A stretch of DNA of 64,000 bases, taken from the IMG/VR virus record IMGVR_UViG_3300028840_001395, positions 124,001 through 188,000 of that record. One strand, 5' to 3'. The notes beneath the pieces were generated by a model. The model ran no database searches. It saw only the letters and a program-made list of their open reading frames with translations, and had not been told where the DNA came from. The translations under genes and the position numbers were made by a program. The first letter of the stretch is position 1. Each line of letters begins with the position of its first letter. Below, piece after piece: positions 359 to 20,962 of this stretch.

Positions 359-934
359 CTAGTGAGATGTCCCGTAGAGCTTGTGCTCCAGAATGTAGTC
401 CATCACCTTGGGCGGAACCATCTTCCGAGCATGACCCAGACCACCTGGGCCGCTCGCCAGGCTCATCCTGATGTCCGTGCTGCTGATGTCAGGGAGGACG
501 AAGGGCATCTGGGACTCCGCACCATCGGGCCGGGGCATCACGAAGAATTCGACCAACCCGGCCAAGTCCTGCCAACGATGCCAGGAGTGCATCACGCCCT
601 CATTGTCCGAGCCGATGATCAGGAACAGGTCGAAGTCCTCCTTCGGGTACTCGACCCGCATCTTCTCCATGAGATCCACCGTGTAGCGGATACGCAGGAG
701 TCGCTCCATCGAGGACACATGGACGTCCGGCATACCACTGAACGCCCGTCCACACATGAAAAGCCGATGGTCGAAGTCGATGAGGTGGGAGTCCTTGTCG
801 AAGGCGTGGTGCCAGCAGGGGTGGACGTAGATGCGGTCAAACTGGCCCATCACCTGGGCGTAGGCCAGGCCCATGACATGAGCGATGTGGGGTGGGTTGA
901 ACCCGCCGCCGAAGAACGCGATACGCTGCTTCAT
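359..934 (-). CDS. nadD: Nicotinate-nucleotide adenylyltransferase
   Basis: FFGGGFNPPHIAH (HxGH-like), IIGSDN and ISSTDIR motifs typical of NadD. Confidence 0.92.
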   Translation of the reverse strand: MKQRIAFFGGGFNPPHIAHVMGLAYAQVMGQFDRIYVHPCWHHAFDKDSHLIDFDHRLFMCGRAFSGMPDVHVSSMERLLRIRYTVDLMEKMRVEYPKEDFDLFLIIGSDNEGVMHSWHRWQDLAGLVEFFVMPRPDGAESQMPFVLPDISSTDIRMSLASGPGGLGHARKMVPPKVMDYILEHKLYGTSH

Positions 935-1959: not shown

Positions 1960-2652
1960 CTACACCTCGAAGAAGATGCCGTCCTTCTGGAGTCGGCGGT
2001 ACGTGGGGCAGTCGAAGCGGTAGAGCTTCGGAGGACGCCGCCCGATGCTCTTGGTCTCCCCGGTCTCGACCAGGACACCCAGGCGGAGCACCCGGCGGCG
2101 GAAGTTCCGCTTGTCGAGCTTGCGGTCGAGGATGATCTCGTACACTCGCTGCAACTCGGTCAGGGTGAACTCCTCGGGCAACAGGTCGATGCCCAGCGGC
2201 TGCCAGCGGACCTTGGAACGAAGCCGCTCCAGGCCCACCGCCAGAATCTCGGCATGGTCGAAGGCCAGCGCACCCTGGATCTTGTCGGCGGGTGCCCAGG
2301 TGACGCCCTGGGCGTCGCTGCCAGGTTGAAGCTGCATCCCTGTCCTGACCAGCGCCAGGTAGGCGGTCGAGATGTAGTGCCCTCGGGGATCCCGCTTGGG
2401 CTTGCCGAACGTGTAGAGCTGTTCCAGGTAGGAGAGCTTGAGCCCTGTCTCCTCCTGAAGTTCCCGCTTGACCGCTGCATCGAGGTCTTCATCCGGCTCC
2501 ACATGGCCCCCAGGGAGCGCCAGGAGGCCCTTGAACGGCTCCTCTCCCCTTTGGATGAGCAAGACCTGGAGTTCCTCGAAGTCGGCGCTCACACCGAAGA
2601 CCACGGCGTCCACGGTGTTGACGGCTCGCGGGTACTCGTAGGTGTAGCTCAC
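1960..2652 (-). CDS. nrtR: NrtR-family Nudix + winged-helix regulator
   Basis: Intact Nudix box GHVEPDEDLDAAVKRELQEETGL; AFDHAEIL; C-terminal FTLTELQRVYEIILDRKLDKRNFRRRVL wHTH. Confidence 0.9.
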   Translation of the reverse strand: MSYTYEYPRAVNTVDAVVFGVSADFEELQVLLIQRGEEPFKGLLALPGGHVEPDEDLDAAVKRELQEETGLKLSYLEQLYTFGKPKRDPRGHYISTAYLALVRTGMQLQPGSDAQGVTWAPADKIQGALAFDHAEILAVGLERLRSKVRWQPLGIDLLPEEFTLTELQRVYEIILDRKLDKRNFRRRVLRLGVLVETGETKSIGRRPPKLYRFDCPTYRRLQKDGIFFEV

Positions 2653-3302: not shown

Positions 3303-3342
3303 CTTCGACCTCCAGTTCCTCAATGTACCCCTCGGGGCCACC

Positions 3343-3543: not shown

Positions 3544-3776
3544 TCGGGAAGCTCCTTCTCCGACCAGATGATGAACGGCCCCTGTCCTGACCCCAAGATC
3601 ATGTAGCCGTGCTCGGGATGCTTGGCCAACCCAGTCGGCCCACTGGGGCCGTCCATCTCCATCCGGAGAATCGCGCGGCCCTCTTCGGGCATCTTGGGGA
3701 GATGCTGTCTCCACTGAGACAGCGGGATGAGGTGCTTCTCGGCCTCGAAGGCGATCTTGCTCAGGTGGTGACTCAC
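3540..3776 (-). CDS. Hypothetical protein
   Basis: Coupled overlaps on both sides. Confidence 0.55.
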   Translation of the reverse strand: MSHHLSKIAFEAEKHLIPLSQWRQHLPKMPEEGRAILRMEMDGPSGPTGLAKHPEHGYMILGSGQGPFIIWSEKELPE

Positions 3777-5518
3777 TTGCTCCCCTTCATCTTGGCCCAG
3801 TAGAGCTTGTCGCCCTGGGCGATGACGAGCTTCGACCCGCTCTTGTAGAGCCGCATGTCGCCCGAGAGCGCCGGGTCATCGATCTCCTTGACCGACGCCG
3901 AATCCTTCCGGGAGGAGCACAGCTCCAGCTTGGAATCCTCGTTGAGACAGACACACACGCCCGAAGCGAGCACCACGAAGTTGAGACCCCCGTGCTGGAT
4001 GTCCTCGACCAGGCGCACGTCGTAGCTGTAGTCACGGGGGTCGAAGCGGAACACCAGCCGGTCATACTGGCCCTTCTTCTCCCCGATGACCATCAGCACT
4101 CCACCGCTGTCCTCATCGGTGCTGTCGAACTTGGCGTCGAGGACGCGGTAGTCGTCCAACTCCTTCATCCGCACCTGGTAGGACTGATCCCCCCGCAGGA
4201 TGGAGACGTGAACGGCCCCGAGGAGTTTCTGGACGACCACACCGGGGTAGAGCCGGGCCGCGTGCTCCAACGTCTGGGCGACCTTGTTGGAGGAGGCGAT
4301 GATATCTGGCCCGGCCTCGTTGAGCACGATGCGATACACGGCGTCCCGAGTCCGCATGTAGAGGTTGCCCCCACCCGACGACACCTCCAGGGCTTCCAGG
4401 TTGAATCCGAGGTACTTGCGATCCTTCACGCTATAGAGCTTGAGCGTCCCGCCCGAGTGGTCAGCCAGCACGGGCCATGCACACCAGGTAAAGCCCAGGC
4501 CAGAGAGCTTTTTCGGGGCGTCTCCACACCGCTTGCCCGGATGGCCCAGGTTGTACCAGATGCCCTGGTCGGTGACAGCGACCAGGGCAGAGGTCGAGTG
4601 CTGGAAGCTGTCCATGCTCCAGAAGCCTCGGACGGTGCCCTTGTGTCCCAGGTCGTCCAGTTCGACCATCTCGATGATGTCCGACCCGGCCACGGCCTTG
4701 ACCTTCGGGACGATGACGGCCACGACTCCGAACTCGCCCGGAGGAGGCAGGCGCTTGCCCTGCTTGAACAGCGCCTCGTACCACTGCCGGTAGGCGGAGG
4801 GGATGACGCTGAAGTCGTAGGCCACCGCAGGCACCTTGACGTTCGGGTCGAACACCGAGATGCCCCGCTGCATCCGGGTCTCCAATCCCTTCGCCGTGGG
4901 GTGCTTGCCCTTGTAGGGGTGGATGCCGGTGAACATCTGGAAGCTGACGATGGCGAAGCTGAACCAGTCGGACAGTTCCGAGAAGTCTGCGGGCTCGACC
5001 GACCAGTCCCGGATCGAGGGCATGATCGCAGAGGCGGGGAAGCTCCGCGTCTGGTAGCTGGCGGCGTCGATGCCGTAGACATCATCGAACTTCTTGCCGA
5101 CGAGGAAGTTCATCTCATTGCCGTCCACCAGGAGCACGTCGGCCTTGTGGACATTGGATACCAGGTCTTGTAGCTTGCGAACAAGCTCCCGCATCCTGTC
5201 GTGGGTCAGGCCCTCTCGCTCTCGGAAGACACGGGGGAACAACTGGCACAACGCCCAGGCGTCCCTGATGAAGCGCATGGTGTAGCCGATGGGCTTCTTC
5301 TTGGTGTCGGTCAGGAGTCCCAACGGGCGAATCACCCGGTCATCCTTGATGGCTGACAGTTCGTGGATCTTGCCCAGCGGGGGCATCGTCTTGGGGTCGT
5401 GGTAGACCTTGAATGACCGCTGGCCACGGGCGTACACGACGCCTTCGCCGCCCTCTCCGACGTAGTTCGCCTGCGTCAGCGTGACCGGCTTGGACTCGCC
5501 CTTGACGTAGACCTTCAT
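3773..5518 (-). CDS. Ser/Thr-type protein kinase (TerY-P triad kinase, YegI-like) with beta-rich C-terminal domain
   Basis: GEGGEGVVY P-loop, FKVYH lysine, DGNEMNFLV catalytic loop, IDAASYQ, SDWFSFAI, GIHPY. Confidence 0.85.
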   Translation of the reverse strand: MKVYVKGESKPVTLTQANYVGEGGEGVVYARGQRSFKVYHDPKTMPPLGKIHELSAIKDDRVIRPLGLLTDTKKKPIGYTMRFIRDAWALCQLFPRVFREREGLTHDRMRELVRKLQDLVSNVHKADVLLVDGNEMNFLVGKKFDDVYGIDAASYQTRSFPASAIMPSIRDWSVEPADFSELSDWFSFAIVSFQMFTGIHPYKGKHPTAKGLETRMQRGISVFDPNVKVPAVAYDFSVIPSAYRQWYEALFKQGKRLPPPGEFGVVAVIVPKVKAVAGSDIIEMVELDDLGHKGTVRGFWSMDSFQHSTSALVAVTDQGIWYNLGHPGKRCGDAPKKLSGLGFTWCAWPVLADHSGGTLKLYSVKDRKYLGFNLEALEVSSGGGNLYMRTRDAVYRIVLNEAGPDIIASSNKVAQTLEHAARLYPGVVVQKLLGAVHVSILRGDQSYQVRMKELDDYRVLDAKFDSTDEDSGGVLMVIGEKKGQYDRLVFRFDPRDYSYDVRLVEDIQHGGLNFVVLASGVCVCLNEDSKLELCSSRKDSASVKEIDDPALSGDMRLYKSGSKLVIAQGDKLYWAKMKGSK

Positions 5519-5772
5519 TTCACCACCCACAGCCAGCCGACGATGCGGCTTTTCTGGTCACCCCTCATGGAATGGAACAGCACGAAGGGATCACCTTTCC
5601 ATCCTTTGCATTTGGGAGGAAGGTCACGTTCGTAGTGGTATCTTTCCACCACGAACCCACAACAGGACTGCGGCTCGGACTCCACCACGAGGATGCACTG
5701 GTTGGGCTGTCCCTCTGGAAGCTCCTCGATGGGGTGAAGGAGAGCCTTGAAGTCGGGATGGAGGGTCTTCAT
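5515..5772 (-). CDS. Hypothetical protein
   Basis: Coupled overlaps, co-oriented. Confidence 0.55.
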   Translation of the reverse strand: MKTLHPDFKALLHPIEELPEGQPNQCILVVESEPQSCCGFVVERYHYERDLPPKCKGWKGDPFVLFHSMRGDQKSRIVGWLWVVK

Positions 5773-6098
5773 CCTGGTGCTCCCGGTGCGAACATCCCCA
5801 TGCCGTAGGTGCCGAAGAACATCTGGGCAAGCTCGCTCTCACGCTTCTCGTCCCGCTTGCCGTCGTTGAGGGCCTCCACGATGAGGCGGATGGCGAGGAG
5901 GAACCGAGGCTGGACCGGCATCTCGTCCGGGATGGCGCTCATGCAGTCCTTGACGGCAGCCACGGCCCAGACGAACTTGCCCGTCCACACCATGTCCTCA
6001 TCCATCGAGCCGTCATCCCAGGCGGAGTCCCAGACGATGCGGAAGCCACCGATGCGCTCGCCTCGCAGTTTGACCTCGATGATGCGTGTGTCAGCCAT
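5769..6098 (-). CDS. Hypothetical protein
   Basis: Coupled, co-oriented. Confidence 0.6.
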   Translation of the reverse strand: MADTRIIEVKLRGERIGGFRIVWDSAWDDGSMDEDMVWTGKFVWAVAAVKDCMSAIPDEMPVQPRFLLAIRLIVEALNDGKRDEKRESELAQMFFGTYGMGMFAPGAPG

Positions 6099-6365
6099 CT
6101 AGCTCCCCCAGTACTCGGCACGGAGCATCTTCTCCGTGAGTGCGTATCCCTTGTTGCACCTCGTCCCGACCAGGTACACCCCATCTTCCAGGGTCCAGCC
6201 GGGCGCACCGAAGTTCGGATGCCGCTGGGCGTGTTCGTGGCCGGAGCAGACGATGATCTTGCCCGATTCGTGGACGAGCAGGCAGTAGTCCTTGAGAAGC
6301 AGGTAGGCCAGGTGCTCCTGATCTTCCAGGGCTGCCTCTGCGATCTCGTCGGCCAGCGTACTCAC
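6099..6365 (-). CDS. Hypothetical protein
   Basis: GTGA overlap with the PP2C gene. Confidence 0.6.
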   Translation of the reverse strand: MSTLADEIAEAALEDQEHLAYLLLKDYCLLVHESGKIIVCSGHEHAQRHPNFGAPGWTLEDGVYLVGTRCNKGYALTEKMLRAEYWGS

Positions 6366-7267
6366 GCATCCCCCAGGTAGATCGCACCGACGCCCAGGTC
6401 ATCGTAGTGCTGCCAGTGGTTCTTCACGCAGAAGCGGGTCAGGAAGCTCTTGCACCTCCGGGCCATAAACTCCCCCGTAAAGCTCTTGATGTCCGTCAAA
6501 TGACCCAGAACCCAGGCCATCGGGATGCGCTCCATCGTCTCGGCGTCCTGGAAGCTCTGAACGCCATCGGAGAACACCGCCACCAGGTCGTACAGCTTGG
6601 GGTCGAAGGTCATGACGAAGGGGAAGTTGTCGTAGGTGACCGTCTGACCCGGTTCACCCTCGATAATCACGGGCCAGTCCCAGTGGTTGTCCGGCTCGGC
6701 CCCCTCCCGCAGCTTCTCCAGGGAATCCCACCGACGCAAGATGCGACCCTCATGCGTCCCACTCGCCTCCATCGTCGCCTCGATGGCCTCCTTGTAGACC
6801 AGGAGCCGGTCCGGGTTGAGCAGGTAGGACAGATAGCTCGGGGCGTTCTGGCAGTCGATCTCGACCACCTCGACCTGTCCCGTCTCCCGCTGCCGGGCAG
6901 CTATCACCCCATCCCCGCAGGTGATGACCTGCACGGAGCCGTCATCCTGCTGGTAGGCCGTCAAGAGGGTGGCGTCAAGACTTTGACGCTTGAGGCTCTG
7001 GGGCAGCTTGTCCAGGGCGTGCCAGATGAGCCAGTCCACCTTCTCGGGCAGCCGGTCACCCAGAATCTCGATCCCCGTGACAGCGGCCATCGTCAGGAGC
7101 CGGGAGCCGAAGTCCGTGTCCGGCGAGCCGGAGCAGCCGTCCGAGACGATGGCGAAGGTGCGGGCACCCTCGTCCACCCCGAACCGGGCCGGGGTCCGAC
7201 CAGAGCGGGCGTAGTCCTGGCAGACCGCGTGAGCCTTGCCCCGAGTGAAGAAGGCATCCGAGTGCAT
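6362..7267 (-). CDS. PP2C-family protein phosphatase (TerY-P triad, YegK-like)
   Basis: AIVSDGCSG, CGDG, AVFSDGV, DDLGVGAI metal-binding motifs. Confidence 0.88.
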   Translation of the reverse strand: MHSDAFFTRGKAHAVCQDYARSGRTPARFGVDEGARTFAIVSDGCSGSPDTDFGSRLLTMAAVTGIEILGDRLPEKVDWLIWHALDKLPQSLKRQSLDATLLTAYQQDDGSVQVITCGDGVIAARQRETGQVEVVEIDCQNAPSYLSYLLNPDRLLVYKEAIEATMEASGTHEGRILRRWDSLEKLREGAEPDNHWDWPVIIEGEPGQTVTYDNFPFVMTFDPKLYDLVAVFSDGVQSFQDAETMERIPMAWVLGHLTDIKSFTGEFMARRCKSFLTRFCVKNHWQHYDDLGVGAIYLGDA

Positions 7268-7279
7268 CGTAGGCCCCCG

Positions 7280-8020
7280 TCAGAAGGTCAACGACTGCGA
7301 CGGCCCGCCCGTGCCGAGCGCCTGGCTCTGAGACGAGAAGGACTTGGAGATGAAACCGCCCAGCTTGGCCAGCTCCTTCTCGGTCGCGTTGGCGATGGCC
7401 ACGTACTGCTGGAACCCCGCCTCGTCCCGGAAGTCCTCCAGGTAGGAGTTGAGGCCCGTGCTGGCGTCCGTGTTCACGCCGATGAGGACCGGCATGATGG
7501 ACTCCAGGGCCTCCTTGCGGCGGGCCTCGGCCAGGGCGTCCTTGACCATCTTGCGGCTGCACTTGCCCTTGTTGTGCTCCCCGTCCGTGATGACGAACAC
7601 GCAGGCGTTGCAGTCGAAGTCGTTGTCCACGAGGGTCTGGCCGTACTGCATGGCCGAGTGGACGGCCTGGTAGGTCGCGTCGTGCAGCGCCGTCAGCCCA
7701 CCCTCGGGCAGGCAGTCGTCGTAGTCGGCCTCGTTGCAGTCCGCCAGCGGCTTGAAGCCGTGGAACTCCTGCACCTTGTCATCGAAGAAGGTCACGCGGA
7801 GCATCATGTTGTCCGCACGGGGAGACCGGCGGCAGGCCTTGACGACCTCCTTGAGCGCGGCCTCGATCTCCTTGCGGAAACCCCAGACCGAGCCGGACAC
7901 GTCCACGACGATCTCGCCCAGCGTGTACTCGGTCGCGCCGAGTTCCTCGATGCGGGTGCCGGAGAACTTGAAGTTGGTGCCACCGATCTGGTGGGTCTCC
8001 ATGTCAGCGAGCTTGGGCAT
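7280..8020 (-). CDS. vWA-domain protein (TerY-like)
   Basis: MIDAS DVSGS, GGLTALHDA, FVITDG; directly upstream of PP2C and kinase. Confidence 0.85.
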   Translation of the reverse strand: MPKLADMETHQIGGTNFKFSGTRIEELGATEYTLGEIVVDVSGSVWGFRKEIEAALKEVVKACRRSPRADNMMLRVTFFDDKVQEFHGFKPLADCNEADYDDCLPEGGLTALHDATYQAVHSAMQYGQTLVDNDFDCNACVFVITDGEHNKGKCSRKMVKDALAEARRKEALESIMPVLIGVNTDASTGLNSYLEDFRDEAGFQQYVAIANATEKELAKLGGFISKSFSSQSQALGTGGPSQSLTF

Positions 8021-8032
8021 CTTGCCCTCCCT

Positions 8033-8887
8033 TCAGGCCAGGAAGTTGACGGTGGTGTCGGTCTTCATCCCCTTGGCGGTCATCTCCTTCACGAAGTCGT
8101 CGCCCAGGGACTCGAAGCCGCCGACGCTGCTGCTGGCGTCCGTGAGCAGGCACAGCTTCTCGACGTACTTGGGGTCGGAGAAGCAGTCCGCGATGTCCCG
8201 CGCCGTGTTGGCCATGCAGTGCGAGAGCGCCTCGCCCGTCATGCCGATGATGTCGGCCTCCTCCAGCGTCTGGATGAGCTTGGTGTTGACCTGCGACTCG
8301 GGGTCGTTCGGGTCGGGCACCTCGGCCTTGACGCCGGAGAAGTGCTCCGTCCAGGGGTTGCTGCCCTTGGTCACGTAGTCGGTCTGGGCGAAGTTGCGCT
8401 CCTCCCAGCCCTGGAGCGCCTGGAACACGACGGGCACGATGTTGTGGCCCCAGGAGCCGATGAGGCAGTGCGGGGGCCAGATGCAGTGCGGGTAGCGCCC
8501 ACCCGCCGTCAGGGCCTTGAGGTAGTCCCGCGAGCGGTCGAGGAAGCTCGGCAGGTGGGTGGTGAACTCCTGGTCGGTCGGGGCCATGTTGTTCGTCGGG
8601 TCGAGGGCAACGATCTTGTCACCGTCCATCCCGAGCAGCGTGAAGGGCGCGGGCGGGTTGCCCGCCGAGTCCTTCCACCACTTCGGGTGGGAGATGTCGA
8701 TCAGCCGGTGGCTGTCGAGGGTGACGTGGATGTCATCGAACTTGTCGCCCACGCGGTCGATCATCGCCGCGAGTCGCGTCATGTCCTCGTCCGCGCCGGG
8801 CACCACGAGTGCCCCCTGGTTGCCGTGTCCGTCGTCCGCGATGCAGAAGTCGTTCTGCGGGTCGATGATCAAGAGCTGGATGTTCAT
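8033..8887 (-). CDS. pncA: Nicotinamidase (isochorismatase/cysteine hydrolase family)
   Basis: LLIIDPQNDF, TLDSH...HP..W, WPPHC...WG, KG, GEALSHC catalytic Cys. Confidence 0.88.
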   Translation of the reverse strand: MNIQLLIIDPQNDFCIADDGHGNQGALVVPGADEDMTRLAAMIDRVGDKFDDIHVTLDSHRLIDISHPKWWKDSAGNPPAPFTLLGMDGDKIVALDPTNNMAPTDQEFTTHLPSFLDRSRDYLKALTAGGRYPHCIWPPHCLIGSWGHNIVPVVFQALQGWEERNFAQTDYVTKGSNPWTEHFSGVKAEVPDPNDPESQVNTKLIQTLEEADIIGMTGEALSHCMANTARDIADCFSDPKYVEKLCLLTDASSSVGGFESLGDDFVKEMTAKGMKTDTTVNFLA

Positions 8888-8923
8888 GGTCTCCTCCTCA
8901 CCCCTCCGTTGGGGCGCTTGGTT

Positions 8924-10000
8924 TCACTCGGGCACCTGGGGAAGCTCATCGGTCAGGAAGCCCGCCTTGACCAGTTCCGCTCGCGTCCCCAGCATCGGGA
9001 TGTTCGGGTTCGCCTTGTGTCTCGTCTGCGCCTCGGCCCGGCGGGCAGCCTTGAGGAAGTCCAGCACGAACGCCTTGGGCACCGGCTGCCAGAGGGCGCT
9101 CTTCACCGCGAAGCCTTCGAGGGACTTCCAATCCGGCTCCGTGAAATCGAACAGCACCTTGTCCACCTGGACGAGGCTGCTGTAGCGCACATCGTAGTAG
9201 GGGATCTCCACATCGAGGAACCGGCTCACCCGCTCGATGGTGCCGATACGCATGATGTCGCCCGTGTCCGGGTTGATGCGCCCGTAGGTGAAGGGCATCC
9301 CGAGCCAGTCGAGAAGCTCCTTCTCGTCCGAGTGCCCATCCCCGGTCCCCCACAGGTCGGGCGACGGGGTGGCCTCGATGATGGGCCGGACGACATCGTA
9401 GATGCCCAGCTTGTTGCCCAGGTAGAAGGCAAGCTGGTACACCTCGGTCTTGCTCAGCATGGCGAGCGGATTGGTGTCCACCTCGCCGTCGCCGCCCTTC
9501 TGGTAGAAGCGCAGCCAGCGATCCTCGCACTCGTTGCCGGTCCCGTGCCGGATGCCCCCGCCCATGATGCGGTTGTAGGCACGACCGATGGGTGCCCGCA
9601 GGGTCGAGCGGATGCTTCCGAGGATGGTCGGGTCGGCATCCATGCGTTCCTTGATCTCGGTGCCGATGTCGGTGCCGAAGTGGGCGTCCACGAGCGACGT
9701 GATCACCTCGTCACGGACGTTGTTGAAGATGTCGTTGAAGTGTCCGATGGCCAGAGGCACCTGGAGAGCCTCGCACAGCTCCCGCGCACGGTCGGTCTGC
9801 TGGAAGCTCGTGTGGATGATGGTGTGGTCGAAGATGCAGTTCTCCGGCCCCAGCGCCTTCACGAGCAACATCGTCATCACGGCGGAGTCGATGCCCCCGG
9901 AGATGTCGAGCTGCGCCTTCGGAACCCCGAACTCGTCGTGATACTCACGGATGGACTGCATCCGGTCACGAGCGAGTCCCTTGGCATCAATGACAGGCAT
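8924..10000 (-). CDS. nadE: NH3-dependent NAD+ synthetase (single domain, no glutaminase)
   Basis: ISGGIDSAV ATP-PPase loop, GTGNECED, YQKGGDG, PLAMLSKTEVYQLA, PSPDLW; ATG at 10000 overlaps the pncB stop (TGATG). Confidence 0.9.
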   Translation of the reverse strand: MPVIDAKGLARDRMQSIREYHDEFGVPKAQLDISGGIDSAVMTMLLVKALGPENCIFDHTIIHTSFQQTDRARELCEALQVPLAIGHFNDIFNNVRDEVITSLVDAHFGTDIGTEIKERMDADPTILGSIRSTLRAPIGRAYNRIMGGGIRHGTGNECEDRWLRFYQKGGDGEVDTNPLAMLSKTEVYQLAFYLGNKLGIYDVVRPIIEATPSPDLWGTGDGHSDEKELLDWLGMPFTYGRINPDTGDIMRIGTIERVSRFLDVEIPYYDVRYSSLVQVDKVLFDFTEPDWKSLEGFAVKSALWQPVPKAFVLDFLKAARRAEAQTRHKANPNIPMLGTRAELVKAGFLTDELPQVPE

Positions 10001-11466
10001 CACATACCTCCCCGGACACGCGCCCACTGCTCCTTGATCATGGCCTTCAGCGCCCTCGTGTGTTCCGACACCTCGGGCTTCACGGTGTCCGTGTGGGTCA
10101 GCCGGTGGAAGCCCTTCGGCTCGGACTCCCACTCCTGGCCGACGACGCTGCGCTTGCCATCCTCACTGCGGAAGATCACGGGCTTGCCGGGCAAGGACAT
10201 CTTGCCCTCGACGGCGAACTTCATCACGTCGCGCTCGCCCGTCCGGCACAGCTTGTAGACCGCCGACACGGCGTTCCGGGTGAACTTGTGCGGGGAGGGG
10301 TCGCAGACGAGGAAGCCGCCAGAGCCGTAGCCCGACTGCTCGGGAGTGATGCCCAGCGACTCGCAGAGCACCTCCTGCGCTCGCGCCTTGAGGACGTTGA
10401 TTCCGTCCATGAACATGTAGAAGGGATTGACGTGTTCCTCGGCCTCGGCCTGGACGTACTCGCGGAGCTGAGCCTCCTGGTCGCCCGAGTCGAAGCGGAC
10501 ACCGTGCTGGATGTCCGGGCGTTCCTTCATCGCCTGGACGGCGGCGGGGATGCCGACCTCCATCGCGTCGAAGGTGTCGAACAGGTAGGAGGGCCGCTGC
10601 GGGCGCATGTCCCGGATGGCCCGGAAGGCGTCCAGGTCGTTGCCCCACCGCTGCTGATGCTCGTGGCCCGTGGTGCCGACCGGCACCATCCCCATCTGCT
10701 TCGCGCCCCAGACGTTCGATGTCCGGGTGATGCCCGCCTCCTTGCAGGCGGACAGGGCGATCTCGTGCATCTGGAGGCAGGTCGCGCCTCGCATCCCGAC
10801 CTCGAAGATGCGGTCGCCGCCGACGATGTTGACCAGCCCCTTGGCGTTGTGGAGCACCTTCATGAAGTAGTCGTCCTGCTGGACGGTGATGTCCCGGTCA
10901 TCCTCGCGCTCGATGGCCTCGCAGGTGAGCCGGACGATCTCGGCCTCATCCTCGCAGGTGCAGCGGAACTCACGGGTGTCGTTGGTCAGCACCTCGGTTG
11001 CGATCTGGATGGGGAAGTGCAGGGCGATGGCCAGCGGCTCCAGCCACGACACCAGGAACGAGGGGCCGGTGATGGTGGCGATGGGTTCCCGTGCCATGAC
11101 CCAGGTGCCAGGAGGCGCACAGGTGACCTCGATGTCCTGCTTGAGCGCGACCTCCATCGACTGCGACATGCCGTAGCCGAACATCCGGAGGTAGTCGTTC
11201 TCACCGGGCCAGATCTCGTCCGGCAGCAGCTCGCGGATGAGCAGGTTGAGGTCGAAGGGGATGTAGTGGGTGCCACGTCGGAAGGACAGGTAGAACGTCT
11301 CGCGCCGGAGGGGGAAGCCCGCCTGGGCCATCGAGAACTTGTAGCCGTCCGACATCAGCACGGACGGATCCTTGCCGTTGAGCATCCGCCCGGCGACATC
11401 GAACTCGATGCACTGGTCGGTTCCGACCCTCGCCAGTCTGCTCTGTCTCTTTGCTCTCTCGTTCAC
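10000..11466 (-). CDS. pncB: Nicotinate phosphoribosyltransferase
   Basis: DGYKFSM, EVGMRG, TSNV, GTTGHE, DTFD, GVRFDSGD, VYKL, K..LPGK; adjacent pncA/nadE favour a nicotinate (not nicotinamide) PRTase. Confidence 0.85.
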   Translation of the reverse strand: MNERAKRQSRLARVGTDQCIEFDVAGRMLNGKDPSVLMSDGYKFSMAQAGFPLRRETFYLSFRRGTHYIPFDLNLLIRELLPDEIWPGENDYLRMFGYGMSQSMEVALKQDIEVTCAPPGTWVMAREPIATITGPSFLVSWLEPLAIALHFPIQIATEVLTNDTREFRCTCEDEAEIVRLTCEAIEREDDRDITVQQDDYFMKVLHNAKGLVNIVGGDRIFEVGMRGATCLQMHEIALSACKEAGITRTSNVWGAKQMGMVPVGTTGHEHQQRWGNDLDAFRAIRDMRPQRPSYLFDTFDAMEVGIPAAVQAMKERPDIQHGVRFDSGDQEAQLREYVQAEAEEHVNPFYMFMDGINVLKARAQEVLCESLGITPEQSGYGSGGFLVCDPSPHKFTRNAVSAVYKLCRTGERDVMKFAVEGKMSLPGKPVIFRSEDGKRSVVGQEWESEPKGFHRLTHTDTVKPEVSEHTRALKAMIKEQWARVRGGM

Positions 11467-11468
11467 CT

Positions 11469-11511
11469 TTAGTGTCCCTCCGACACCTTTATAGTGTCAC
11501 CCGCACACTTT
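11469..11511. promoter_or_regulatory. Two tandem NrtR-box-like palindromes
   Basis: ttaGTGTC-cctcc-GACACctt (11469-11489) and ataGTGTC-acccg-CACACttt (11491-11511); each has a GT-N7-AC core; centres 22 bp apart. Confidence 0.7.
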
Positions 11512-11516
11512 GTCAA
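11488..11516 (-). promoter_or_regulatory. Host sigma70-type promoter of the pncB operon
   Basis: TTGACA-N17-TATAAA on the minus strand. Confidence 0.8.
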
Positions 11517-11534
11517 GCACTTTCTTCGTGCCAC

Positions 11535-11566
11535 CTAGACTACTCTCGCGGGAACACAGATAAGCC
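11535..11566 (-). promoter_or_regulatory. Class I bipartite phage promoter motif
   Basis: GGCTTAT-N14-GAGTAGTCTAG. Confidence 0.75.
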
Positions 11567-12172
11567 TGAAATTCCCGGCTCCCCTCCCATCCTCGGAGGG
11601 TCAGGCAATCCGTTGTGTTTCCAGATGAGTCGCATCAGTCGATCCTCGGCGTCCGCGACAACGGCCCAGGTCATGGCCACCGAGGACACCCCCTCTTTCT
11701 GGACGACTGCGGTGAGGAGCTTCCGGGCGTTCTCCTTCGCGTGACCCTGGAACAGGTTCCACAGGCTGCCATGCTCTCGTCCGGCGTCCATGAGGCGGTT
11801 GTATCGTTCGTGGCCTCGCAGGTAGCCGATGACGTGGACCAGGAGGTAGCGCCGGGGGTTGTCGCTGGGACGCTCGACACCAAGCTCCTTGTAGAGCCAG
11901 GTGAAGTAGAACGAGTGCTGTATCGACACCGTGGCCAGGCCGAGAGGCACCCTCTCGCTGATGAGCCTGTATTGCTCATCGTGAACGTCGCTGATCTGGA
12001 GGCACTGCAACATGAACTCGGGGTACACGCCCCTGATGTTGTTCAGCACCTCCTTCATGTAGATGCACGCTTCGCCCTGACGCTTGAGGTAGGCGTCCAT
12101 GTCGAGATTCTGTGCCCACTCGGGCGGGGACTTGGCGGGGATGTTGAAGTCGAGGTCTTTCATCAGAGGCAT
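11540..12172 (-). CDS. Hypothetical protein (210 aa)
   Basis: Co-oriented, overlaps the end of the CoaB-like gene. Confidence 0.65.
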   Translation of the reverse strand: MPLMKDLDFNIPAKSPPEWAQNLDMDAYLKRQGEACIYMKEVLNNIRGVYPEFMLQCLQISDVHDEQYRLISERVPLGLATVSIQHSFYFTWLYKELGVERPSDNPRRYLLVHVIGYLRGHERYNRLMDAGREHGSLWNLFQGHAKENARKLLTAVVQKEGVSSVAMTWAVVADAEDRLMRLIWKHNGLPDPPRMGGEPGISGLSVFPRE

Positions 12173-13287
12173 TGGATGAACCCATGTCCTTCGATGTTGA
12201 AAACGGGGCCGGGGATGATCCGGTTGTTGTCGCGGACGGTGCCCGGCGGAGCGTGCGGCACAGTCGGCACGTCGGGAAGCTGCTCGTGCAGGTGGAGGAC
12301 GGCCTTGGACTCGTGGGTTTCTCCGACCGCGATGAGCAGCGGGGCGTTGAGCGTGGCCTTGGTGTTGCCCTCAACCAAGATGGTCGAGCCGTGTGTGGCA
12401 CACCCCTCCCACCCCTTCACCAGCACAGCATCCTTGCTGGTGAATCCCACACCCTTCTCCCGAGGGCTGCACAGCCATCCGAACCCCGGCAGCTTGACGG
12501 CGAGGGAACCGAACACTCGATGTTCTCCTTCGATGGGCTTGATGAAGCGGTCGAGGTTCTCCTCCACAATGCGGTCGAACAGGCGGAACCGATCCGGGAA
12601 GTTCTTCTGCGCCTGCTCCATGAGGATGTAGCCCCCGCTCAGTTCCGTCCGGTAGTGCTCGTCCTCGATGACCGCCAGGAGGTCGGCGTAGAAGGCGTTC
12701 CAGTCGTCCTCGTGGGTCACGACCGTCCTGTCCTTGTGGACGAGGTACTTGGTCTTGAGGCCACGGCCCATGTCGTTGGCGATCACCAGGTTGCAGCGAG
12801 CGTTGAGCAGGACGTGGTACGCCGCCTCGATCAGCGCCTCGTGATCCGCGTTGACCAGCATCTTGCAGCCGATGAGGGTCAGCTTCGGGTTGTTGACCTT
12901 CATGTCCTCGATGACCCGAGGGGCGAGGATGAAGGGCACCCGAATGATGTCTCCGGGCTTGTACCCGGCGGTGGGCATCTTGCCCTCGTAGGGTTCGGCG
13001 GGAATCCAGTTGACCACGGCTGCGGCCATGATGGCGGCGTCGTGGGTCTTGGCGAGTTCCAGGGCCTTCATGTGGTACTGCATGAAGCCCTTGTGCCGGA
13101 CGACCTTGATACCCACAGAGGGCTGGTGCTGGAACGTGTCCGCCACCAGGAGCGTGACCTGGTGGCCTCGCCGGACGAGGTAGTGACCGAACTTCACGGC
13201 CCAGATACCCCGGATTCTGTTGCTCACGAGCTTGTTGGCGTCTAGCGACCCGTAGACGGGGCCAGCAGTGATGAGGATCTTCTTCAC
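12163..13287 (-). CDS. CoaB/Dfp-like phosphopantothenate-cysteine-ligase-family domain fused to a class II aldolase-like domain
   Basis: KKILITAGP...SN...G, MAAAV, LIGCK, VIAND (CoaB pattern); C-terminal GSLAVK...VLHLHE...GHG; GTG start overlaps the MTase stop. Confidence 0.65.
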   Translation of the reverse strand: MKKILITAGPVYGSLDANKLVSNRIRGIWAVKFGHYLVRRGHQVTLLVADTFQHQPSVGIKVVRHKGFMQYHMKALELAKTHDAAIMAAAVVNWIPAEPYEGKMPTAGYKPGDIIRVPFILAPRVIEDMKVNNPKLTLIGCKMLVNADHEALIEAAYHVLLNARCNLVIANDMGRGLKTKYLVHKDRTVVTHEDDWNAFYADLLAVIEDEHYRTELSGGYILMEQAQKNFPDRFRLFDRIVEENLDRFIKPIEGEHRVFGSLAVKLPGFGWLCSPREKGVGFTSKDAVLVKGWEGCATHGSTILVEGNTKATLNAPLLIAVGETHESKAVLHLHEQLPDVPTVPHAPPGTVRDNNRIIPGPVFNIEGHGFIQCL

Positions 13288-13946
13288 TTCGCAACCTCCA
13301 GATGCTTCGGCTTGGTGCAGACCCAGCGCAGCCCCCGCCCGTGCTCCTCCAAGAGCACCTTGAATCCCGCCAGGCAGAGGAGGCGGCGGATGTCCTGAGC
13401 CGGGTGATACCGGAAGTGGGTCACGTCCCAGCCCGTCCCCAGCCGCCACTGGAGATGGACGACATGCTCGCCCCAGGCGTAGTGGCACTCGAAGTATCGG
13501 GAATCCCTGAACTTGTAGGACTTCCATGAGTAGGGCCGGGGCTGGATGAACGTGCTGAACACGAACTGACCGCCGGGCTGCAGGACGCGGAAGACCGCCG
13601 GAATGACGAGCGATGGATTGAGGTAGCCCATCGCCTGTCGGCAGACGACCACATCAAAGGTGTCACGCGGGAAGTAGATGGCCAGGTTCTCGGCCCGGCC
13701 CCGGACGGTCTCGATCTCCTTGTGCTTGCAGCGAGGGTTGATATCGAACAGCGTGATGTCTGAGGGATTCTGGCGACCGGCTTCCCAGCCTCGGCAGTGA
13801 GCGGCCAGCGACACGGCTCCCGTTCCCCCGCAGAGGTCGAGCAGCTTGAGGCCCGGCTCGTAGTCCACCAGGTCGAGCAGGTCGTGGGGCTGTTGCAGCC
13901 AGGGGGCGTAGATGTCGGCGTACTTCTCGGTGGTGCAGTTCAGCAA
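13284..13946 (-). CDS. Class I SAM-dependent methyltransferase
   Basis: LLDLCGGTG motif I, FDIN, FDVVVCRQAM, VLQPGG. Confidence 0.85.
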   Translation of the reverse strand: MLNCTTEKYADIYAPWLQQPHDLLDLVDYEPGLKLLDLCGGTGAVSLAAHCRGWEAGRQNPSDITLFDINPRCKHKEIETVRGRAENLAIYFPRDTFDVVVCRQAMGYLNPSLVIPAVFRVLQPGGQFVFSTFIQPRPYSWKSYKFRDSRYFECHYAWGEHVVHLQWRLGTGWDVTHFRYHPAQDIRRLLCLAGFKVLLEEHGRGLRWVCTKPKHLEVAK

Positions 13947-14140
13947 TCGATGACCTCCAGGGCTGCTCGGACGCGCTCGACACGCTCCGGGTTGGAACCC
14001 CCGTCATAGGCGGCAGCGACCAGGGCGGCAGCCCCTCGCAGGAGAACGCGGAAGCCTTCTCCCAGGACTCGATCACCGACCTTGGCGTGGGCCATGATCT
14101 CGCGGACGACTAGGTTGAGGGTCTGACGGGGTTGAGCCAT
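13940..14140 (-). CDS. Hypothetical protein
   Basis: GGAG RBS, co-oriented. Confidence 0.5.
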   Translation of the reverse strand: MAQPRQTLNLVVREIMAHAKVGDRVLGEGFRVLLRGAAALVAAAYDGGSNPERVERVRAALEVIDC

Positions 14141-14196
14141 CTGTCTATCTCCTTCCCCTGCCCGAAGTCGGGCGGGGAGGTCAGCACCAAGTCATG

Positions 14197-14757
14197 CTAC
14201 CCGATCTCCTCCCAGCAGCGCTTGAACTCCTCGAACTCCTCGTCCATGAACAGCATGAAGGTCAGCTCCTGGAGCCGCCACTGCTTGCAGGCGATGATGG
14301 CCTTGACCGTTCTGACGAAGTTCTCGATGGTGCAGCCGAACACCCCGCACGAGATCGCGGGCATCGCCATCGTGCGGAGGTGCATGGCCGAGGCCATGTC
14401 CAGGCAGGCGACGATGGACAGCCCGAGCATCACCTCGGGGGCAGCGAAGTACTTGCCCTCGCCCGGATGAACCGGGGCGCGAGCCGTGGGGCTGTCGGGG
14501 AAGATGGGACCGACCGTGTGGATGATGAAGTTGGCGGGCAGATCGAAACCCGGCGTCACGCGGGCGTCTCCGGTCGGACAGCGGACGTGGATGGACACCT
14601 CGGGGATCTTCTTGCAGCACTCCAGCAGTTCCGACCCGGCAGCCCGGTGGATGCAGCCATCCACTCCCCCGCCGCCCAGGAGAGTCACGTTGGCGGCGTT
14701 GACGATGGCGTCACCCTCGAACTGTGTGATGTCGCCTTGCTCGATCTTGATCTTCAT
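14197..14757 (-). CDS. Macrodomain (ADP-ribose-binding/hydrolase, YmdB-like)
   Basis: GDIT, DAIVNAAN..LLGGGGVDGCIHRAAG, IIHTVGP, AMPAISCGVFG. Confidence 0.93.
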   Translation of the reverse strand: MKIKIEQGDITQFEGDAIVNAANVTLLGGGGVDGCIHRAAGSELLECCKKIPEVSIHVRCPTGDARVTPGFDLPANFIIHTVGPIFPDSPTARAPVHPGEGKYFAAPEVMLGLSIVACLDMASAMHLRTMAMPAISCGVFGCTIENFVRTVKAIIACKQWRLQELTFMLFMDEEFEEFKRCWEEIG

Positions 14758-14771
14758 GTCATTACCTCCAC

Positions 14772-14803
14772 CTAGACTACTCTGCCAGGGTGGAAAGTAA
14801 GCC
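14772..14803 (-). promoter_or_regulatory. Class I bipartite phage promoter motif
   Basis: GGCTTAC-N14-GAGTAGTCTAG followed by a GGAGG RBS and the macrodomain ATG. Confidence 0.8.
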
Positions 14804-17191: not shown

Positions 17192-17213
17192 TGTTCGATC
17201 CTCCTTGGATCCT

Positions 17214-17726
17214 CTACTCTTTGCGGAAGGGATTGGGCCTACCCCGTAGGGCTGTCAGGAACCCCTCGTACCAGACCATCCCCATCGGGCTGTGGGGGTC
17301 GTAGGGGTTGTCCTTTTCGTGGTGCATGTAGATGCCCTGGTCGAGCTTGGGCAGCGGCCACGACACCCCGATGTCTCGGAGCATCTTCATCAGGTGCTTG
17401 TAGCCCTCGATGTAGAACGGTTCCAGATCATCCAACCGTGGACGCACGACAACCTGGTATCCGTCGTTCTCCAGGTGGTAGGTGGTGACGCTGGAGTGCC
17501 CCTTGTGCTGACCGAACGGGACGCCGAAGCCGGACACAAAGCCGATGGTGTCGATCCACCTTTCCAGCTTCTCGCCCTCATGGTTACGGGTGATACGGGC
17601 CTCGTAGTTGACATCGGAGAGGAACTTGAGCATTCGCCAGGCTCCGGTGAGGACGGGAGTGCCGATGGGCATGAATTCCAGGTCGTCAGCGGTTAACGGT
17701 TGGAGGATGACTCGGGGGAGTTCCAT
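17214..17726 (-). CDS. Hypothetical protein (170 aa, MELPRVIL...)
   Basis: 3' part of the track ORF 17214..18362; its upstream part is an off-frame shadow of rIIB. Confidence 0.55.
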   Translation of the reverse strand: MELPRVILQPLTADDLEFMPIGTPVLTGAWRMLKFLSDVNYEARITRNHEGEKLERWIDTIGFVSGFGVPFGQHKGHSSVTTYHLENDGYQVVVRPRLDDLEPFYIEGYKHLMKMLRDIGVSWPLPKLDQGIYMHHEKDNPYDPHSPMGMVWYEGFLTALRGRPNPFRKE

Positions 17727-17737
17727 CGGAGCACCGG

Positions 17738-18763
17738 CTACTTGCCGTCCCGCACCTTGCAGATGGTGGCGACCAGGGCCACCTTGCCGCCCCGGATCTT
17801 GCTCGCGCCGACGATCTCCAGGTGGCAGGTCGCGTAGCGCCGGAGGTGGTGGAGATCCTGCTTGAGCAGGCCCGCCGAGTCCTTCCGGTTGAAGCGGTGG
17901 AACCGCTTGCGCTCCGTGGACGTGGGCGGCGTGACCTGGCCCCGCGTCTTCCCCTTGGCCTTGACCTTGGTGGTCTTGCCCGGCTTCTTGCCGTCCGCAG
18001 CCGCCTGGGTGACCGTGCGCTTCGCGGGGGCGGGCACGTCGCGGGCCGGGATGGTCGTGCTCCCCAGCTTGGCCCCGTGGAAGCCGATGACCTCGTACTC
18101 GCAGACGCGCATCTTGCGGGCGGACTCGTCGTAGGGCACGCTGACCACGTTCTCCGGATCCACCTTGCAGATGACCACGCGGGGGCCGAAGGTCTCGGCG
18201 TAGGACAGCGCCCCGACGTGGAACCCCTCGTGGCACGCCTCGCGCGGGTCGTCGCTGATCTTGTTGCGGGGCATCCGGTTGGTCGCGCCCGGCTTGTTGT
18301 TCCACTGGCCGGAGTGCAAGTCCTTGAGCCTGTGGGTGACGCCCTTGTACGCCAGGAAGCACCCATCCTCGGTGATGGGGTGCCCGCCGTGCTGCAAGAA
18401 GGCGAAGAGTTGCTCCACCGACCGCTTCGACGGGTTGCGGGCCAGGCGCTCGAAGAAGCGGCAGAGCGGCTTCGGATCCTCGCCCCGCTGGAGCATGGCC
18501 GTCAGGCGCTTGCCGAACGCGGCGGGGACGGACTCGCCCTGGTAGCGCACGGCGTCGTCCTGGAGGGTGAACTCGCCCTCCGACCAGGACGCGACGGCCC
18601 GCTTGACCGTCAGGAAGCCGGGCACCTCGTCCCAGGCCTTGCGCTCCAACGCCGACTTGAGGCCCTTGAAGTGCGGGCTCGACTCGGCCACCGTGAAGGG
18701 CTGGCCCTTGTACACGATGCTGATGGAATCGGTGGTCATCGTGAAGCTCGGGATGGTACTCAT
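17738..18763 (-). CDS. rIIB: rIIB-like protein
   Basis: PITEDGCFLAYKGV, GFHVG...Y...F, KVDPENVVSVPYD...KMRVCEYEV; start at MSTIPSF with a GGAGG RBS. Confidence 0.85.
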   Translation of the reverse strand: MSTIPSFTMTTDSISIVYKGQPFTVAESSPHFKGLKSALERKAWDEVPGFLTVKRAVASWSEGEFTLQDDAVRYQGESVPAAFGKRLTAMLQRGEDPKPLCRFFERLARNPSKRSVEQLFAFLQHGGHPITEDGCFLAYKGVTHRLKDLHSGQWNNKPGATNRMPRNKISDDPREACHEGFHVGALSYAETFGPRVVICKVDPENVVSVPYDESARKMRVCEYEVIGFHGAKLGSTTIPARDVPAPAKRTVTQAAADGKKPGKTTKVKAKGKTRGQVTPPTSTERKRFHRFNRKDSAGLLKQDLHHLRRYATCHLEIVGASKIRGGKVALVATICKVRDGK

Positions 18764-18789
18764 GGCTTGTTCCTCCTTCTCCTCTTCCC

Positions 18790-20943: not shown

Positions 20944-20962
20944 CGTCGTCTCCCTCTCGGTT

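What the first reader, a model, noticed from the sequence alone, without database searches (positions are those of the whole stretch)
11469..11566. Dual-promoter control region: host sigma70 promoter under tandem operators plus a phage-specific promoter
Seen: within 100 bp upstream of pncB lie a near-consensus sigma70 promoter, two palindromes 22 bp (about two helical turns) apart, and a class I motif at 11535-11566. This is the only place in the window where I saw both promoter types stacked. Inference: the operon can be expressed from host RNAP at entry and from the phage programme later, and NrtR could block both (occlusion of one, roadblock of the other).
Basis: partly seen in the sequence, partly recalled or inferred. 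Interest (0 to 1): 0.65.

Follow-up and report, generated by a model that had tools for sequence, protein, structure and literature searches.

The report
NrtR-gated promoter on phage NAD operon
In front of its NAD+-salvage genes, a 435-kb phage carries a bacterial-type promoter flanked by two binding sites for the ADP-ribose-sensing repressor NrtR, which the phage also encodes. This sits just behind one of the phage's own standard promoters, so NAD+ rebuilding may be switched on when NAD+ is being broken down.

Summary
All three elements are present, on the minus strand. There is a sigma70-type promoter (TTGACA, 17 nt, TATAAA). There are two 15-bp palindromes of the form GTGTS-N5-SACAC with centres 22 bp apart. 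There is one copy of a 56-copy phage promoter-like motif.

The palindromes are the only two of their kind in the 435,804-bp genome. They match the operator that I derived independently from 80 bacterial loci encoding homologues of the phage's own NrtR. In those loci GTGT-N7-ACAC is the most enriched palindrome (77 observed, 4.5 expected). It usually starts 2 nt after the -35 hexamer and is often tandem at 22-25 bp, which is the phage layout.

Two diverged relatives (PncB 64% identical) keep all 20 operator-arm bases and the -35 hexamer, while other intergenic positions drift (p = 3.5e-6).

The region heads a tightly packed ~10-kb unit running pncB, nadE, pncA-like and on to nrtR, so it is probably autoregulated.

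Not supported: the timing claim (host promoter at entry, phage promoter later) and the roadblock. Class I units carry early-type genes (rIIA/rIIB, anti-restriction, macro). No phage RNA polymerase was detected. No RNA data exist.

Verdict: a bacterial NrtR regulon cassette embedded behind a phage promoter. This is a new variant of a known kind.

The parts
11558..11566 (-). Class I motif, upstream (-35-like) block GGCTTATCT. It lies inside the 3' end of the upstream ORF.
   Evidence: Positions -21 to -13 before the core are near-invariant in 56 genome copies: G54, C51, T55, T51, A51 of 56. GGCTTA is conserved in relatives L190/L192.
11532..11545 (-). Class I motif, downstream block GAGTAGTCTAGGTG. 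It contains the -10-like TAGTCT (11542..11537) and the TAG stop of the upstream ORF (11542..11540). The inferred start of transcription is near 11530.
   Evidence: The core is a perfect 11/11 match. 13 of 14 bases are identical in relatives while the spacer between the two blocks is unrelated.
11511..11516 (-). Sigma70-type -35 hexamer TTGACA
   Evidence: 6/6 conserved in L190/L192. The gap to the operator is 2 nt, as in 17 of 22 bacterial NrtR promoters with a recognisable -35.
11494..11508 (.). Operator A (NrtR box), GTGTG-N5-GACAC read on the minus strand. It fills the -35/-10 spacer, at about -27 to -13 of the sigma70 promoter and +23 to +37 of class I.
   Evidence: Top-scoring site in the whole genome with a matrix built from bacterial NrtR sites, 17.2 bits. 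Arms invariant in relatives while the centre varies.
11488..11493 (-). Sigma70-type -10 hexamer TATAAA (TATCCT in relatives), directly abutting operator A. The inferred start is near 11481.
   Evidence: TAnnnT follows the site immediately in 11 of 22 bacterial cases.
11472..11486 (.). Operator B (NrtR box), GTGTC-N5-GACAC. It covers about -5 to +10 of the sigma70 promoter and +45 to +59 of class I. Its centre, GGAGG (11481..11477), is the likely ribosome-binding site in this phage.
   Evidence: Second-best site in the genome, 15.6 bits. Arms invariant in relatives. 22 bp from operator A.
10000..11466 (-). pncB-like nicotinate phosphoribosyltransferase (488 aa, GTG start), first gene of the unit
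   Evidence: Pfam NAPRTase 5e-5. NCBIfam nicotinate PRTase models down to 3e-25, below cut-offs. The N-terminal extension is conserved in relatives.
8924..9979 (-). nadE-like NAD synthase
   Evidence: The start is placed by the 351-aa homologue in a related contig.
8033..8887 (-). Isochorismatase-like protein, possibly a nicotinamidase (PncA-like); weak match
   Evidence: 56% identical to the first gene of the bacterial NrtR operon in L004.
3773..8020 (-). VWA (7280..8020), PP2C phosphatase (6362..7267), small ORFs and a 585-aa kinase-like protein (3773..5530). This block is shared with a bacterial NrtR operon.
   Evidence: The L004 homologues are 60%, 33% and 42% identical and in the same order.
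1960..2652 (-). nrtR: a Nudix domain with a complete Nudix box plus the NrtR winged-helix domain. It lies in the same gene string as pncB.
   Evidence: Pfam NrtR_WHD 2e-26 and NUDIX 1e-21. NCBIfam ADPR-responsive repressor 1e-55. PDB 3GZ5/3GZ6 at 1e-36 over the full length. Recognition-helix residues D180, R182, N183, F184 and R185 are invariant across the clade.
11540..12172 (-). Upstream ORF (210 aa, unknown function). Its 3' end carries the class I motif.
   Evidence: No family hit. 65% identical in relatives.

Best explanation
The 73-bp gap upstream of pncB holds a complete bacterial-type NrtR-controlled promoter. It reads: -35 TTGACA, 2 nt, NrtR box A, -10 hexamer, NrtR box B. It sits about 50 bp downstream of one of the phage's own consensus (class I) promoters.

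Shown by sequence:
- The two boxes are the only such sites in the genome.
- They have the motif, register and tandem spacing of operators found next to bacterial homologues of the phage's NrtR.
- They are under purifying selection in diverged relatives.
- The unit they head is a gap-free string of genes about 10 kb long: pncB, nadE, pncA-like, a VWA/PP2C/kinase-like block, and nrtR itself.

Inferred:
- Two NrtR dimers bind on the same face of the helix and occlude RNA polymerase at the sigma70-type promoter.
- ADP-ribose, the product of NAD+ cleavage, releases NrtR as in characterised family members. The operon then rises when NAD+ is being consumed and shuts itself down through nrtR autoregulation.
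- Bound NrtR at +23 to +59 may also impede transcripts from the class I promoter and read-through from the upstream operon. This last step is the weakest.
- Which polymerase form reads class I, and when, is unknown.
For: - Unique pair of GTGTS-N5-SACAC sites 22 bp apart in 435 kb.
- The phage encodes an NrtR with an intact winged helix, and its recognition-helix residues are invariant across the clade.
- In 80 bacterial loci encoding 43-55%-identical NrtRs, an unbiased count of all 4-mer/gap/4-mer palindromes puts GTGT-N7-ACAC first (77 observed, 4.5 expected). The next three are nested registers of the same 21-bp palindrome.
- Many of these sites sit directly upstream of pncB or nrtR. They start 2 nt after the -35 hexamer in 17 of 22 cases and are tandem at 22-25 bp in 11 of 15 close pairs. 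L141, L129, L160 and L124 are examples with the same layout.
- A matrix built from the bacterial sites ranks the two phage sites first and second in the genome.
- Relatives L190/L192 (PncB 64% aa, about 74% nt identity) keep 20/20 arm bases and 6/6 of the -35. The other intergenic positions (operator centres included) are 19/45 identical; Fisher p = 3.5e-6.
- Tandem NrtR sites and release by ADP-ribose are documented for S. oneidensis NrtR (PMC2330246).
- No terminator-like site on the coding strand and no class I motif lies between 11466 and about 1500.
Against: - No transcript ends, binding data or expression data exist. No RNA run holds this DNA.
- The phage sites score 15.6-17.2 bits against a bacterial median of 25.5, because their flanks are poorer and their centres GC-rich.
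- The window's -10 lacks the final T (TATAAA).
- Near-consensus sigma70 matches are not enriched in this genome, so host-type promoters are not a general feature of the phage.
- The core pattern used to collect bacterial sites for the matrix was first seen in the phage. The enumeration was independent of it.
- Tandem 22-bp-period GTGTC-N5-GACAC arrays also occur in 96 stretches of DNA from IMG/VR viral contigs; the 96 fetched stretches showed no NrtR. The bare pattern is therefore not exclusive to NrtR.
Confidence: 0.7

Rival explanations
1. Relic cassette. The sigma70 promoter and NrtR boxes came in with pncB or the NrtR module by horizontal transfer and are no longer used. All expression comes from class I promoters, and the phage NrtR acts only as an ADP-ribose pyrophosphatase.
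For: - Much of the operon is clearly of bacterial origin (56-63% identity and the same gene order as L004).
- The Nudix box is complete, so enzymatic activity is possible.
- Host-type promoters are otherwise not enriched.
- A good class I promoter sits just upstream.
Against: Relatives at about 74% nt identity keep every operator-arm base, the -35 hexamer and a TAnnnT -10, while neighbouring bases drift. The winged-helix recognition residues are invariant.
Confidence: 0.1
2. The boxes are operators, but the binder that matters is the host's own NrtR or another protein, not the phage copy. The host's repressor would then silence this promoter at entry.
For: - At entry no phage NrtR exists unless it is packaged.
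- The same motif is used by NrtRs of many phyla, so cross-recognition is likely if the host has one.
- Unrelated viral contigs carry similar arrays without NrtR.
Against: - The host is unknown.
- The phage keeps its own nrtR in the same operon in all relatives seen.
- ORFs next to the arrays in other viruses have no homologue in this genome.
- This explanation is compatible with the main one rather than exclusive of it.
Confidence: 0.12
3. The palindromes act mainly in RNA. In the long class I transcript they fold into a composite hairpin that hides the ribosome-binding site or serves as a processing or stability element.
For: The leader from about 11531 folds at -22.6 kcal/mol (z = -3.4), with GGAGG partly paired. 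A transcript starting near 11481 would lack the 5' arms.
Against: - In relatives the ribosome-binding site lies downstream of box B and the loop sequences differ.
- The arms are conserved without any covariation.
- The same motif in bacteria sits in the promoter spacer, which is not transcribed.
Confidence: 0.06

Closest known systems
Bacterial NrtR regulons (Rodionov et al. 2008, PMC2330246; S. oneidensis NrtR with tandem sites at prs-nadV, PDB 3GZ6)
   Same: - A Nudix plus winged-helix repressor.
- A 21-bp-type palindrome with the GT-N7-AC core.
- Tandem sites over the promoter of NAD salvage genes.
- nrtR linked to pncB and nadE, as in the cyanobacterial pncB-nadD-nrtR-nadE layout. The sites here match the motif of the closest bacterial clade.
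   Different: - It is carried by a 435-kb virus.
- The promoter is stacked behind a phage-consensus promoter.
- The regulon is a single operon.
- The Nudix box is fully intact.
- Response to ADP-ribose is untested here.
Phage NAD+ reconstitution pathways NARP1, NARP2, NARP3 (bioRxiv 10.1101/2024.02.11.579819; PMC13464706)
   Same: Phage-encoded enzymes that rebuild NAD+, plausibly countering NAD+-depleting defence.
   Different: - The enzyme set here is the four-step nicotinamidase-like, PncB, NadD, NadE route, not Adps/Namat, NAMPT/NMNAT or PnuC/NadR.
- The papers I searched report no dedicated metabolite-sensing repressor for those pathways.
Bacillus phage G gp273-gp283 cluster and the uncultured 636-kb phage LR756504.1
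   Same: - Both encode an NrtR-like protein beside NAD salvage genes.
- LR756504.1 has a GTGT-N7-ACAC site 20 nt upstream of a NadM-like/NAMPT pair.
   Different: - These are unrelated phages of 26-31% GC.
- Phage G shows no site of this motif.
- Neither was seen with a stacked phage promoter, and neither has been analysed for regulation as far as I could find.

Membership tests
NrtR regulator (protein) | N-terminal Nudix-fold domain | tested here: met
   PF00293 at 1.2e-21. The Nudix box G49-x5-E55-x7-R63-E64-L-x-E67-E68-x-G70 is complete (read).
NrtR regulator (protein) | C-terminal NrtR-type winged-helix DNA-binding domain | tested here: met
   PF21906 at 2.2e-26. Full-length alignment to S. 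oneidensis NrtR 3GZ5/3GZ6 at 1e-36. NCBIfam NF050029 at 1.3e-55, below the equivalog cut-off.
NrtR regulator (protein) | DNA binding relieved by ADP-ribose | not testable with these tools
   Known for the Synechocystis and Shewanella proteins (PMC2330246). Needs EMSA or ITC here.
NrtR operator | Palindrome with the GT-N7-AC core in front of NAD genes | tested here: met
   Both sites contain GTGT-N7-ACAC directly upstream of pncB. The core definition comes from PMC2330246.
NrtR operator | Match to the motif used by the closest NrtR clade | tested here: met
   The clade motif was derived from 80 loci. The phage sites rank 1 and 2 in the genome but score below the bacterial median.
NrtR operator | Conservation in related genomes | tested here: met
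   Arms 20/20 identical in L190 against 19/45 elsewhere, p = 3.5e-6.
Sigma70-type promoter | -35 and -10 hexamers at 16-18 nt | tested here: met
   TTGACA-17-TATAAA, 11/12. Relatives have TTGACA-17-TATCCT.
Sigma70-type promoter | A transcript start 6-8 nt downstream of the -10 | not testable with these tools
   No RNA runs hold this DNA.
Phage class I promoter-like motif | Two conserved blocks at fixed spacing with a free spacer, oriented with the downstream gene | tested here: met
   56 copies, with a median of 16 nt to a ribosome-binding site and start codon, and several divergent pairs. The blocks are kept and the spacer replaced in relatives.
Phage class I promoter-like motif | Read by a phage-specific polymerase or sigma factor | tested here: inconclusive
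   There is no RpoB-like or T7-like polymerase. Only small proteins with sigma70 region 4 were found. Divergent phage polymerases could escape Pfam.

The most novel reading that the evidence does not exclude
The phage uses ADP-ribose, the debris of host NADase-type defence (or of its own ADP-ribose chemistry), as an alarm. Its own NrtR holds a roughly 10-kb NAD+-rebuilding and signalling operon in check and releases it only when NAD+ is being cleaved. This would be an inducible, self-resetting counter-defence circuit. The unrelated 636-kb phage LR756504.1 also pairs an NrtR with a matching site in front of NadM-like/NAMPT genes, which suggests that huge phages have recruited NrtR sensing more than once.
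Probability: 0.3. Interest if true: 0.8.

Novelty: new variant of a known kind. Interest (0 to 1): 0.6.

Why it matters
Phage NAD+ reconstitution is a recently recognised answer to NAD+-depleting bacterial immunity, but how phages control it is not described in the papers I could search.

This sequence shows a full metabolite-sensing repressor/operator/promoter cassette of bacterial type. It is kept under selection in a huge phage and wired in series with a phage promoter.

It gives a directly testable system. The test needs one 60-bp probe, one 230-aa protein and one ligand. The question is whether a virus measures the damage done to the NAD+ pool and responds.

It also provides a clean operator motif (TTA-GTGT-N7-ACAC-TAA, 2 nt after the -35 hexamer) for a large NrtR clade spread over many phyla.

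Tried and rejected
- Megablast of 5 kb against the phage records: no match, because own and near records are masked.
- tblastn with PncB against phage records: only 22-29% partial hits.
- The search for related loci with PncB in viral contigs: nothing.
- The stacked-layout pattern in viral contigs: nothing. The metagenome scan then found the relatives.
- The mycobacterial NrtR motif (GTTTTCGA-N7-TCGAAAAC, PMC6800001) does not match. My first guess of an actinobacterial phage was dropped when the NrtR homologues pointed to Myxococcota, Planctomycetota, Verrucomicrobiota and Bacteroidota.
- Searches for a phage RNA polymerase or complete sigma factor: PF00562 and PF00940 found none. PF04542 gave only a sub-threshold hit in a DUF2325 protein. 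PF04545 hit small HTH proteins.
- RNA evidence: no RNA run holds the stretch.
- ORFs next to the tandem arrays in 96 stretches of DNA from IMG/VR viral contigs gave no NrtR and no homologue in this genome.
- The upstream 210-aa ORF gave no usable lead in Pfam, PHROGs, NCBIfam or the Atlas.
- The terminator-like call at 11472-11486 on the plus strand is operator B read on the non-coding strand, not a terminator.

Full report
**Setting**

The window is bases 124001-188000 of a single 435,804-bp virus record. The record has direct terminal repeats, is rated complete and has 62% GC. Genes around the finding run on the minus strand.

The gene downstream of the finding is ORF 10000..11466. It is a divergent nicotinate phosphoribosyltransferase (Pfam NAPRTase 5e-5; NCBIfam PncB models down to 3e-25 but below cut-off). 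Upstream lies a 210-aa ORF of unknown function (11540..12172). Its TAG stop (11542..11540) lies inside the class I motif.

**Observation check**

Read on the minus strand, the 73-bp gap contains these elements in order:
- the class I block GGCTTATCT (11566..11558);
- a 12-nt free spacer;
- GAGTAGTCTAGGTG (11545..11532);
- 15 nt;
- TTGACA (11516..11511);
- 2 nt;
- palindrome A (11508..11494);
- TATAAA (11493..11488);
- 1 nt;
- palindrome B (11486..11472), whose centre is GGAGG;
- 5 nt;
- the GTG start (11466).

The built-in promoter scan missed the sigma70 match only because it insists on T at the last -10 position.

By hexamers alone the promoter is not significant genome-wide. There are four matches of 11/12 or better, against 0-3 in ten shuffles.

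The palindromes are another matter. GTGTS-N5-SACAC occurs exactly twice in 435 kb, and both copies are here, 22 bp apart.

**Class I motif**

A search with one mismatch allowed finds 56 copies of the core. Aligned on the core, positions -21 to -13 are almost invariant (GsCTTAyyt). The 12 nt between the blocks are free.

Copies point toward the adjacent gene, and several form divergent pairs. The median distance from the motif to a start codon preceded by a ribosome-binding site is 16 nt. At pncB it is 68 nt, because the NrtR promoter cassette sits in between.

The -10-like TAGTCT fits TAnnnT. The upstream block does not resemble TTGACA.

No RpoB-like or T7-like polymerase and no complete sigma factor was detected. 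Only small proteins with sigma70 region 4 were found.

Class I units in the window drive a macro-domain gene, rIIA- and rIIB-like genes and an anti-restriction homologue. That content looks early, not late.

**Whose operators?**

The window encodes an NrtR at 1960..2652 (Nudix 1e-21, NrtR winged helix 2e-26). It aligns over its full length with S. oneidensis NrtR, PDB 3GZ5/3GZ6, at 1e-36.

Its closest relatives are bacterial. They are 55-66% identical and are labelled Deltaproteobacteria/Myxococcota, Planctomycetota and Verrucomicrobiota.

I fetched 80 bacterial loci encoding homologues of 43-55% identity. I then counted every 4-mer/gap/reverse-complement palindrome with gaps of 3-11 nt. GTGT-N7-ACAC came first (77 observed, 4.5 expected). 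It was followed by TAGT-N11-ACTA, AGTG-N9-CACT and TGTA-N5-TACA, which are nested registers of one 21-bp palindrome, TTAGTGTA-N5-TACACTAA. This agrees with the published family core GT-N7-AC (PMC2330246).

The sites lie directly upstream of pncB or nrtR in many loci. Where a -35 hexamer is recognisable, the site starts 2 nt after it in 17 of 22 cases. Eleven of those 22 have TAnnnT immediately after the site. Close pairs are mostly 22-25 bp apart.

Loci L141, L129, L160 and L124 show the same order as the phage: -35, 2 nt, site, -10, site.

A matrix built from the bacterial sites ranks the two phage sites first and second in the whole genome (17.2 and 15.6 bits; the next is 12.9). Both are below the bacterial median of 25.5.

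A 63%-identical NrtR on a deltaproteobacterial contig (L004) also has two such sites about 23 bp apart in front of its operon.

**Conservation**

A metagenome scan for the stacked layout returned the same phage (L191) and two relatives, L190 and L192. These are well diverged: PncB 64%, NadE 60% and the upstream ORF 65% amino-acid identity, and about 74% nucleotide identity.

In the alignment of the control region:
- all 20 operator-arm bases are identical;
- all 6 bases of the -35 are identical;
- 13 of 14 bases of the class I downstream block are identical;
- the remaining intergenic positions, operator centres included, are 19 of 45 identical (Fisher p = 3.5e-6 for arms against the rest).

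The -10 is TATCCT in the relatives and the sites are 23 bp apart. This is the pattern expected of protein-contacted operators and of a two-block promoter.

**The unit controlled**

From 11466 down to about 1518, the ORFs abut or overlap. No class I motif and no terminator-like site lies on the coding strand. The order is:
- pncB;
- nadE;
- an isochorismatase-like (possibly nicotinamidase) gene;
- a VWA protein;
- a PP2C phosphatase;
- small ORFs;
- a 585-aa protein whose bacterial homologue has a weak kinase match;
- a thioesterase;
- nrtR;
- a PTH2 peptidyl-tRNA hydrolase.

nrtR is thus probably inside its own regulon. nadD (359..934) lies outside it, behind the next class I motif at 1166-1200.

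There is also no terminator between the upstream class I unit (from 14803) and pncB. Read-through is therefore a third possible source of transcription.

**Mechanism**

Shown: the elements, their uniqueness, their register and their conservation.

From established knowledge of the family (PMC2330246):
- NrtR dimers bind such palindromes;
- tandem sites are both occupied at S. oneidensis prs-nadV;
- ADP-ribose releases the protein.

Inferred:
- Box A in the spacer and box B over the start occlude the sigma70-type promoter.
- ADP-ribose from NAD+ cleavage derepresses it.
- nrtR in the operon gives negative feedback.
- The fully intact Nudix box (read; invariant in the clade) might let the sensor destroy its own inducer.
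- For class I transcripts the boxes lie at about +23 to +59, so a roadblock is possible but unproven.
- The long leader can also fold (-22.6 kcal/mol, z = -3.4) so that GGAGG is partly paired. The relatives place their ribosome-binding site downstream of box B, so I treat this as incidental.

**Comparison and novelty**

The cassette is a member of the bacterial NrtR regulon type. Its setting is new in three ways: it is in a huge phage, it is in series with a phage promoter, and it sits in front of a four-step nicotinamide-to-NAD+ route that differs from NARP1-3.

Full-text searches found no report of a phage NrtR regulon.

It is not unique in nature:
- Bacillus phage G has an NrtR-like gene beside PncA, PncB, NadD and NadE homologues.
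- The uncultured 636-kb phage LR756504.1 has an NrtR and a perfect GTGT-N7-ACAC site 20 nt upstream of a NadM-like/NAMPT pair.

**Caveats**

- There is no RNA or binding evidence.
- The host is unknown.
- Tandem arrays of a similar bare pattern occur in 96 stretches of DNA from IMG/VR viral contigs; the 96 fetched stretches showed no NrtR. The bare pattern alone does not prove the binder.

Noticed in passing
window 1960-8887 (minus strand); L004 1834-6693: The phage block of isochorismatase-like, VWA, PP2C, 585-aa kinase-like and NrtR genes has the same gene order as a deltaproteobacterial contig. Identities are 56, 60, 33, 42 and 63%. There it forms an NrtR-box-fronted operon without pncB. 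The function of this VWA/phosphatase/kinase-like set under ADP-ribose control is unknown.
   Followed up: partly
genome 123850-123979, i.e. 21-150 bp before the window start (minus strand): A second stacked pair: a class I motif followed about 95 nt later by TTGACA-16-TATCAT. The context around the -35 resembles the pncB site, but there are no NrtR boxes.
   Followed up: partly
L007-L102 (IMG/VR contigs): 96 stretches of DNA from viral contigs carry arrays of GTGTC-N5-GACAC (often GTGTCA-N3-TGACAC) at a strict 22-bp period. Arrays often have 3-5 copies, lie next to AT-rich DNA or overlap a gene start, and have no NrtR nearby. This looks like a widespread operator or iteron type with an unidentified binder.
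   Followed up: partly
L193 (LR756504.1) 7992-12668: An uncultured 636-kb, 26%-GC phage encodes an NrtR. It has GTGTATAATGTACAC 20 nt upstream of a NadM-like (Nudix) gene and a NAMPT gene, with a partial second site 43 bp further up.
   Followed up: partly
L194 (Bacillus phage G) 5854-12573: gp273 (NrtR-like Nudix protein) heads a cluster with isochorismatase, PncB, KptA, NadD and NadE genes. No GTGT-N7-ACAC site was seen, so its operator, if any, is of another type.
   Followed up: partly
genome 31416-32105 (minus strand): A 201-aa protein with sigma70 region 4 (r4_2, 1.7e-12) is preceded by GTGACA-16-TATAAT about 55 nt upstream of its start. It is a candidate host-read early gene for a factor that could redirect polymerase to class I promoters.
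   Followed up: no
window 12163-22294 (minus strand): Neighbouring class I units encode a CoaBC-like DFP protein, a SAM methyltransferase, a macro-domain protein, rIIA- and rIIB-like proteins and an anti-restriction homologue. This is a dense host-takeover and counter-defence region.
   Followed up: partly
window 11440-11531 (minus strand, as RNA): The leader of a class I transcript can fold into a composite hairpin built from the two operator palindromes (-22.6 kcal/mol, z = -3.4). This partly pairs the GGAGG ribosome-binding site. A transcript from the sigma70-type promoter would lack the 5' arms.
   Followed up: partly
window 43192-43701 (plus strand): A 169-aa Cro/CI-type HTH_3 protein (2.5e-11). 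It is another candidate regulator in the window, with no site assigned.
   Followed up: no
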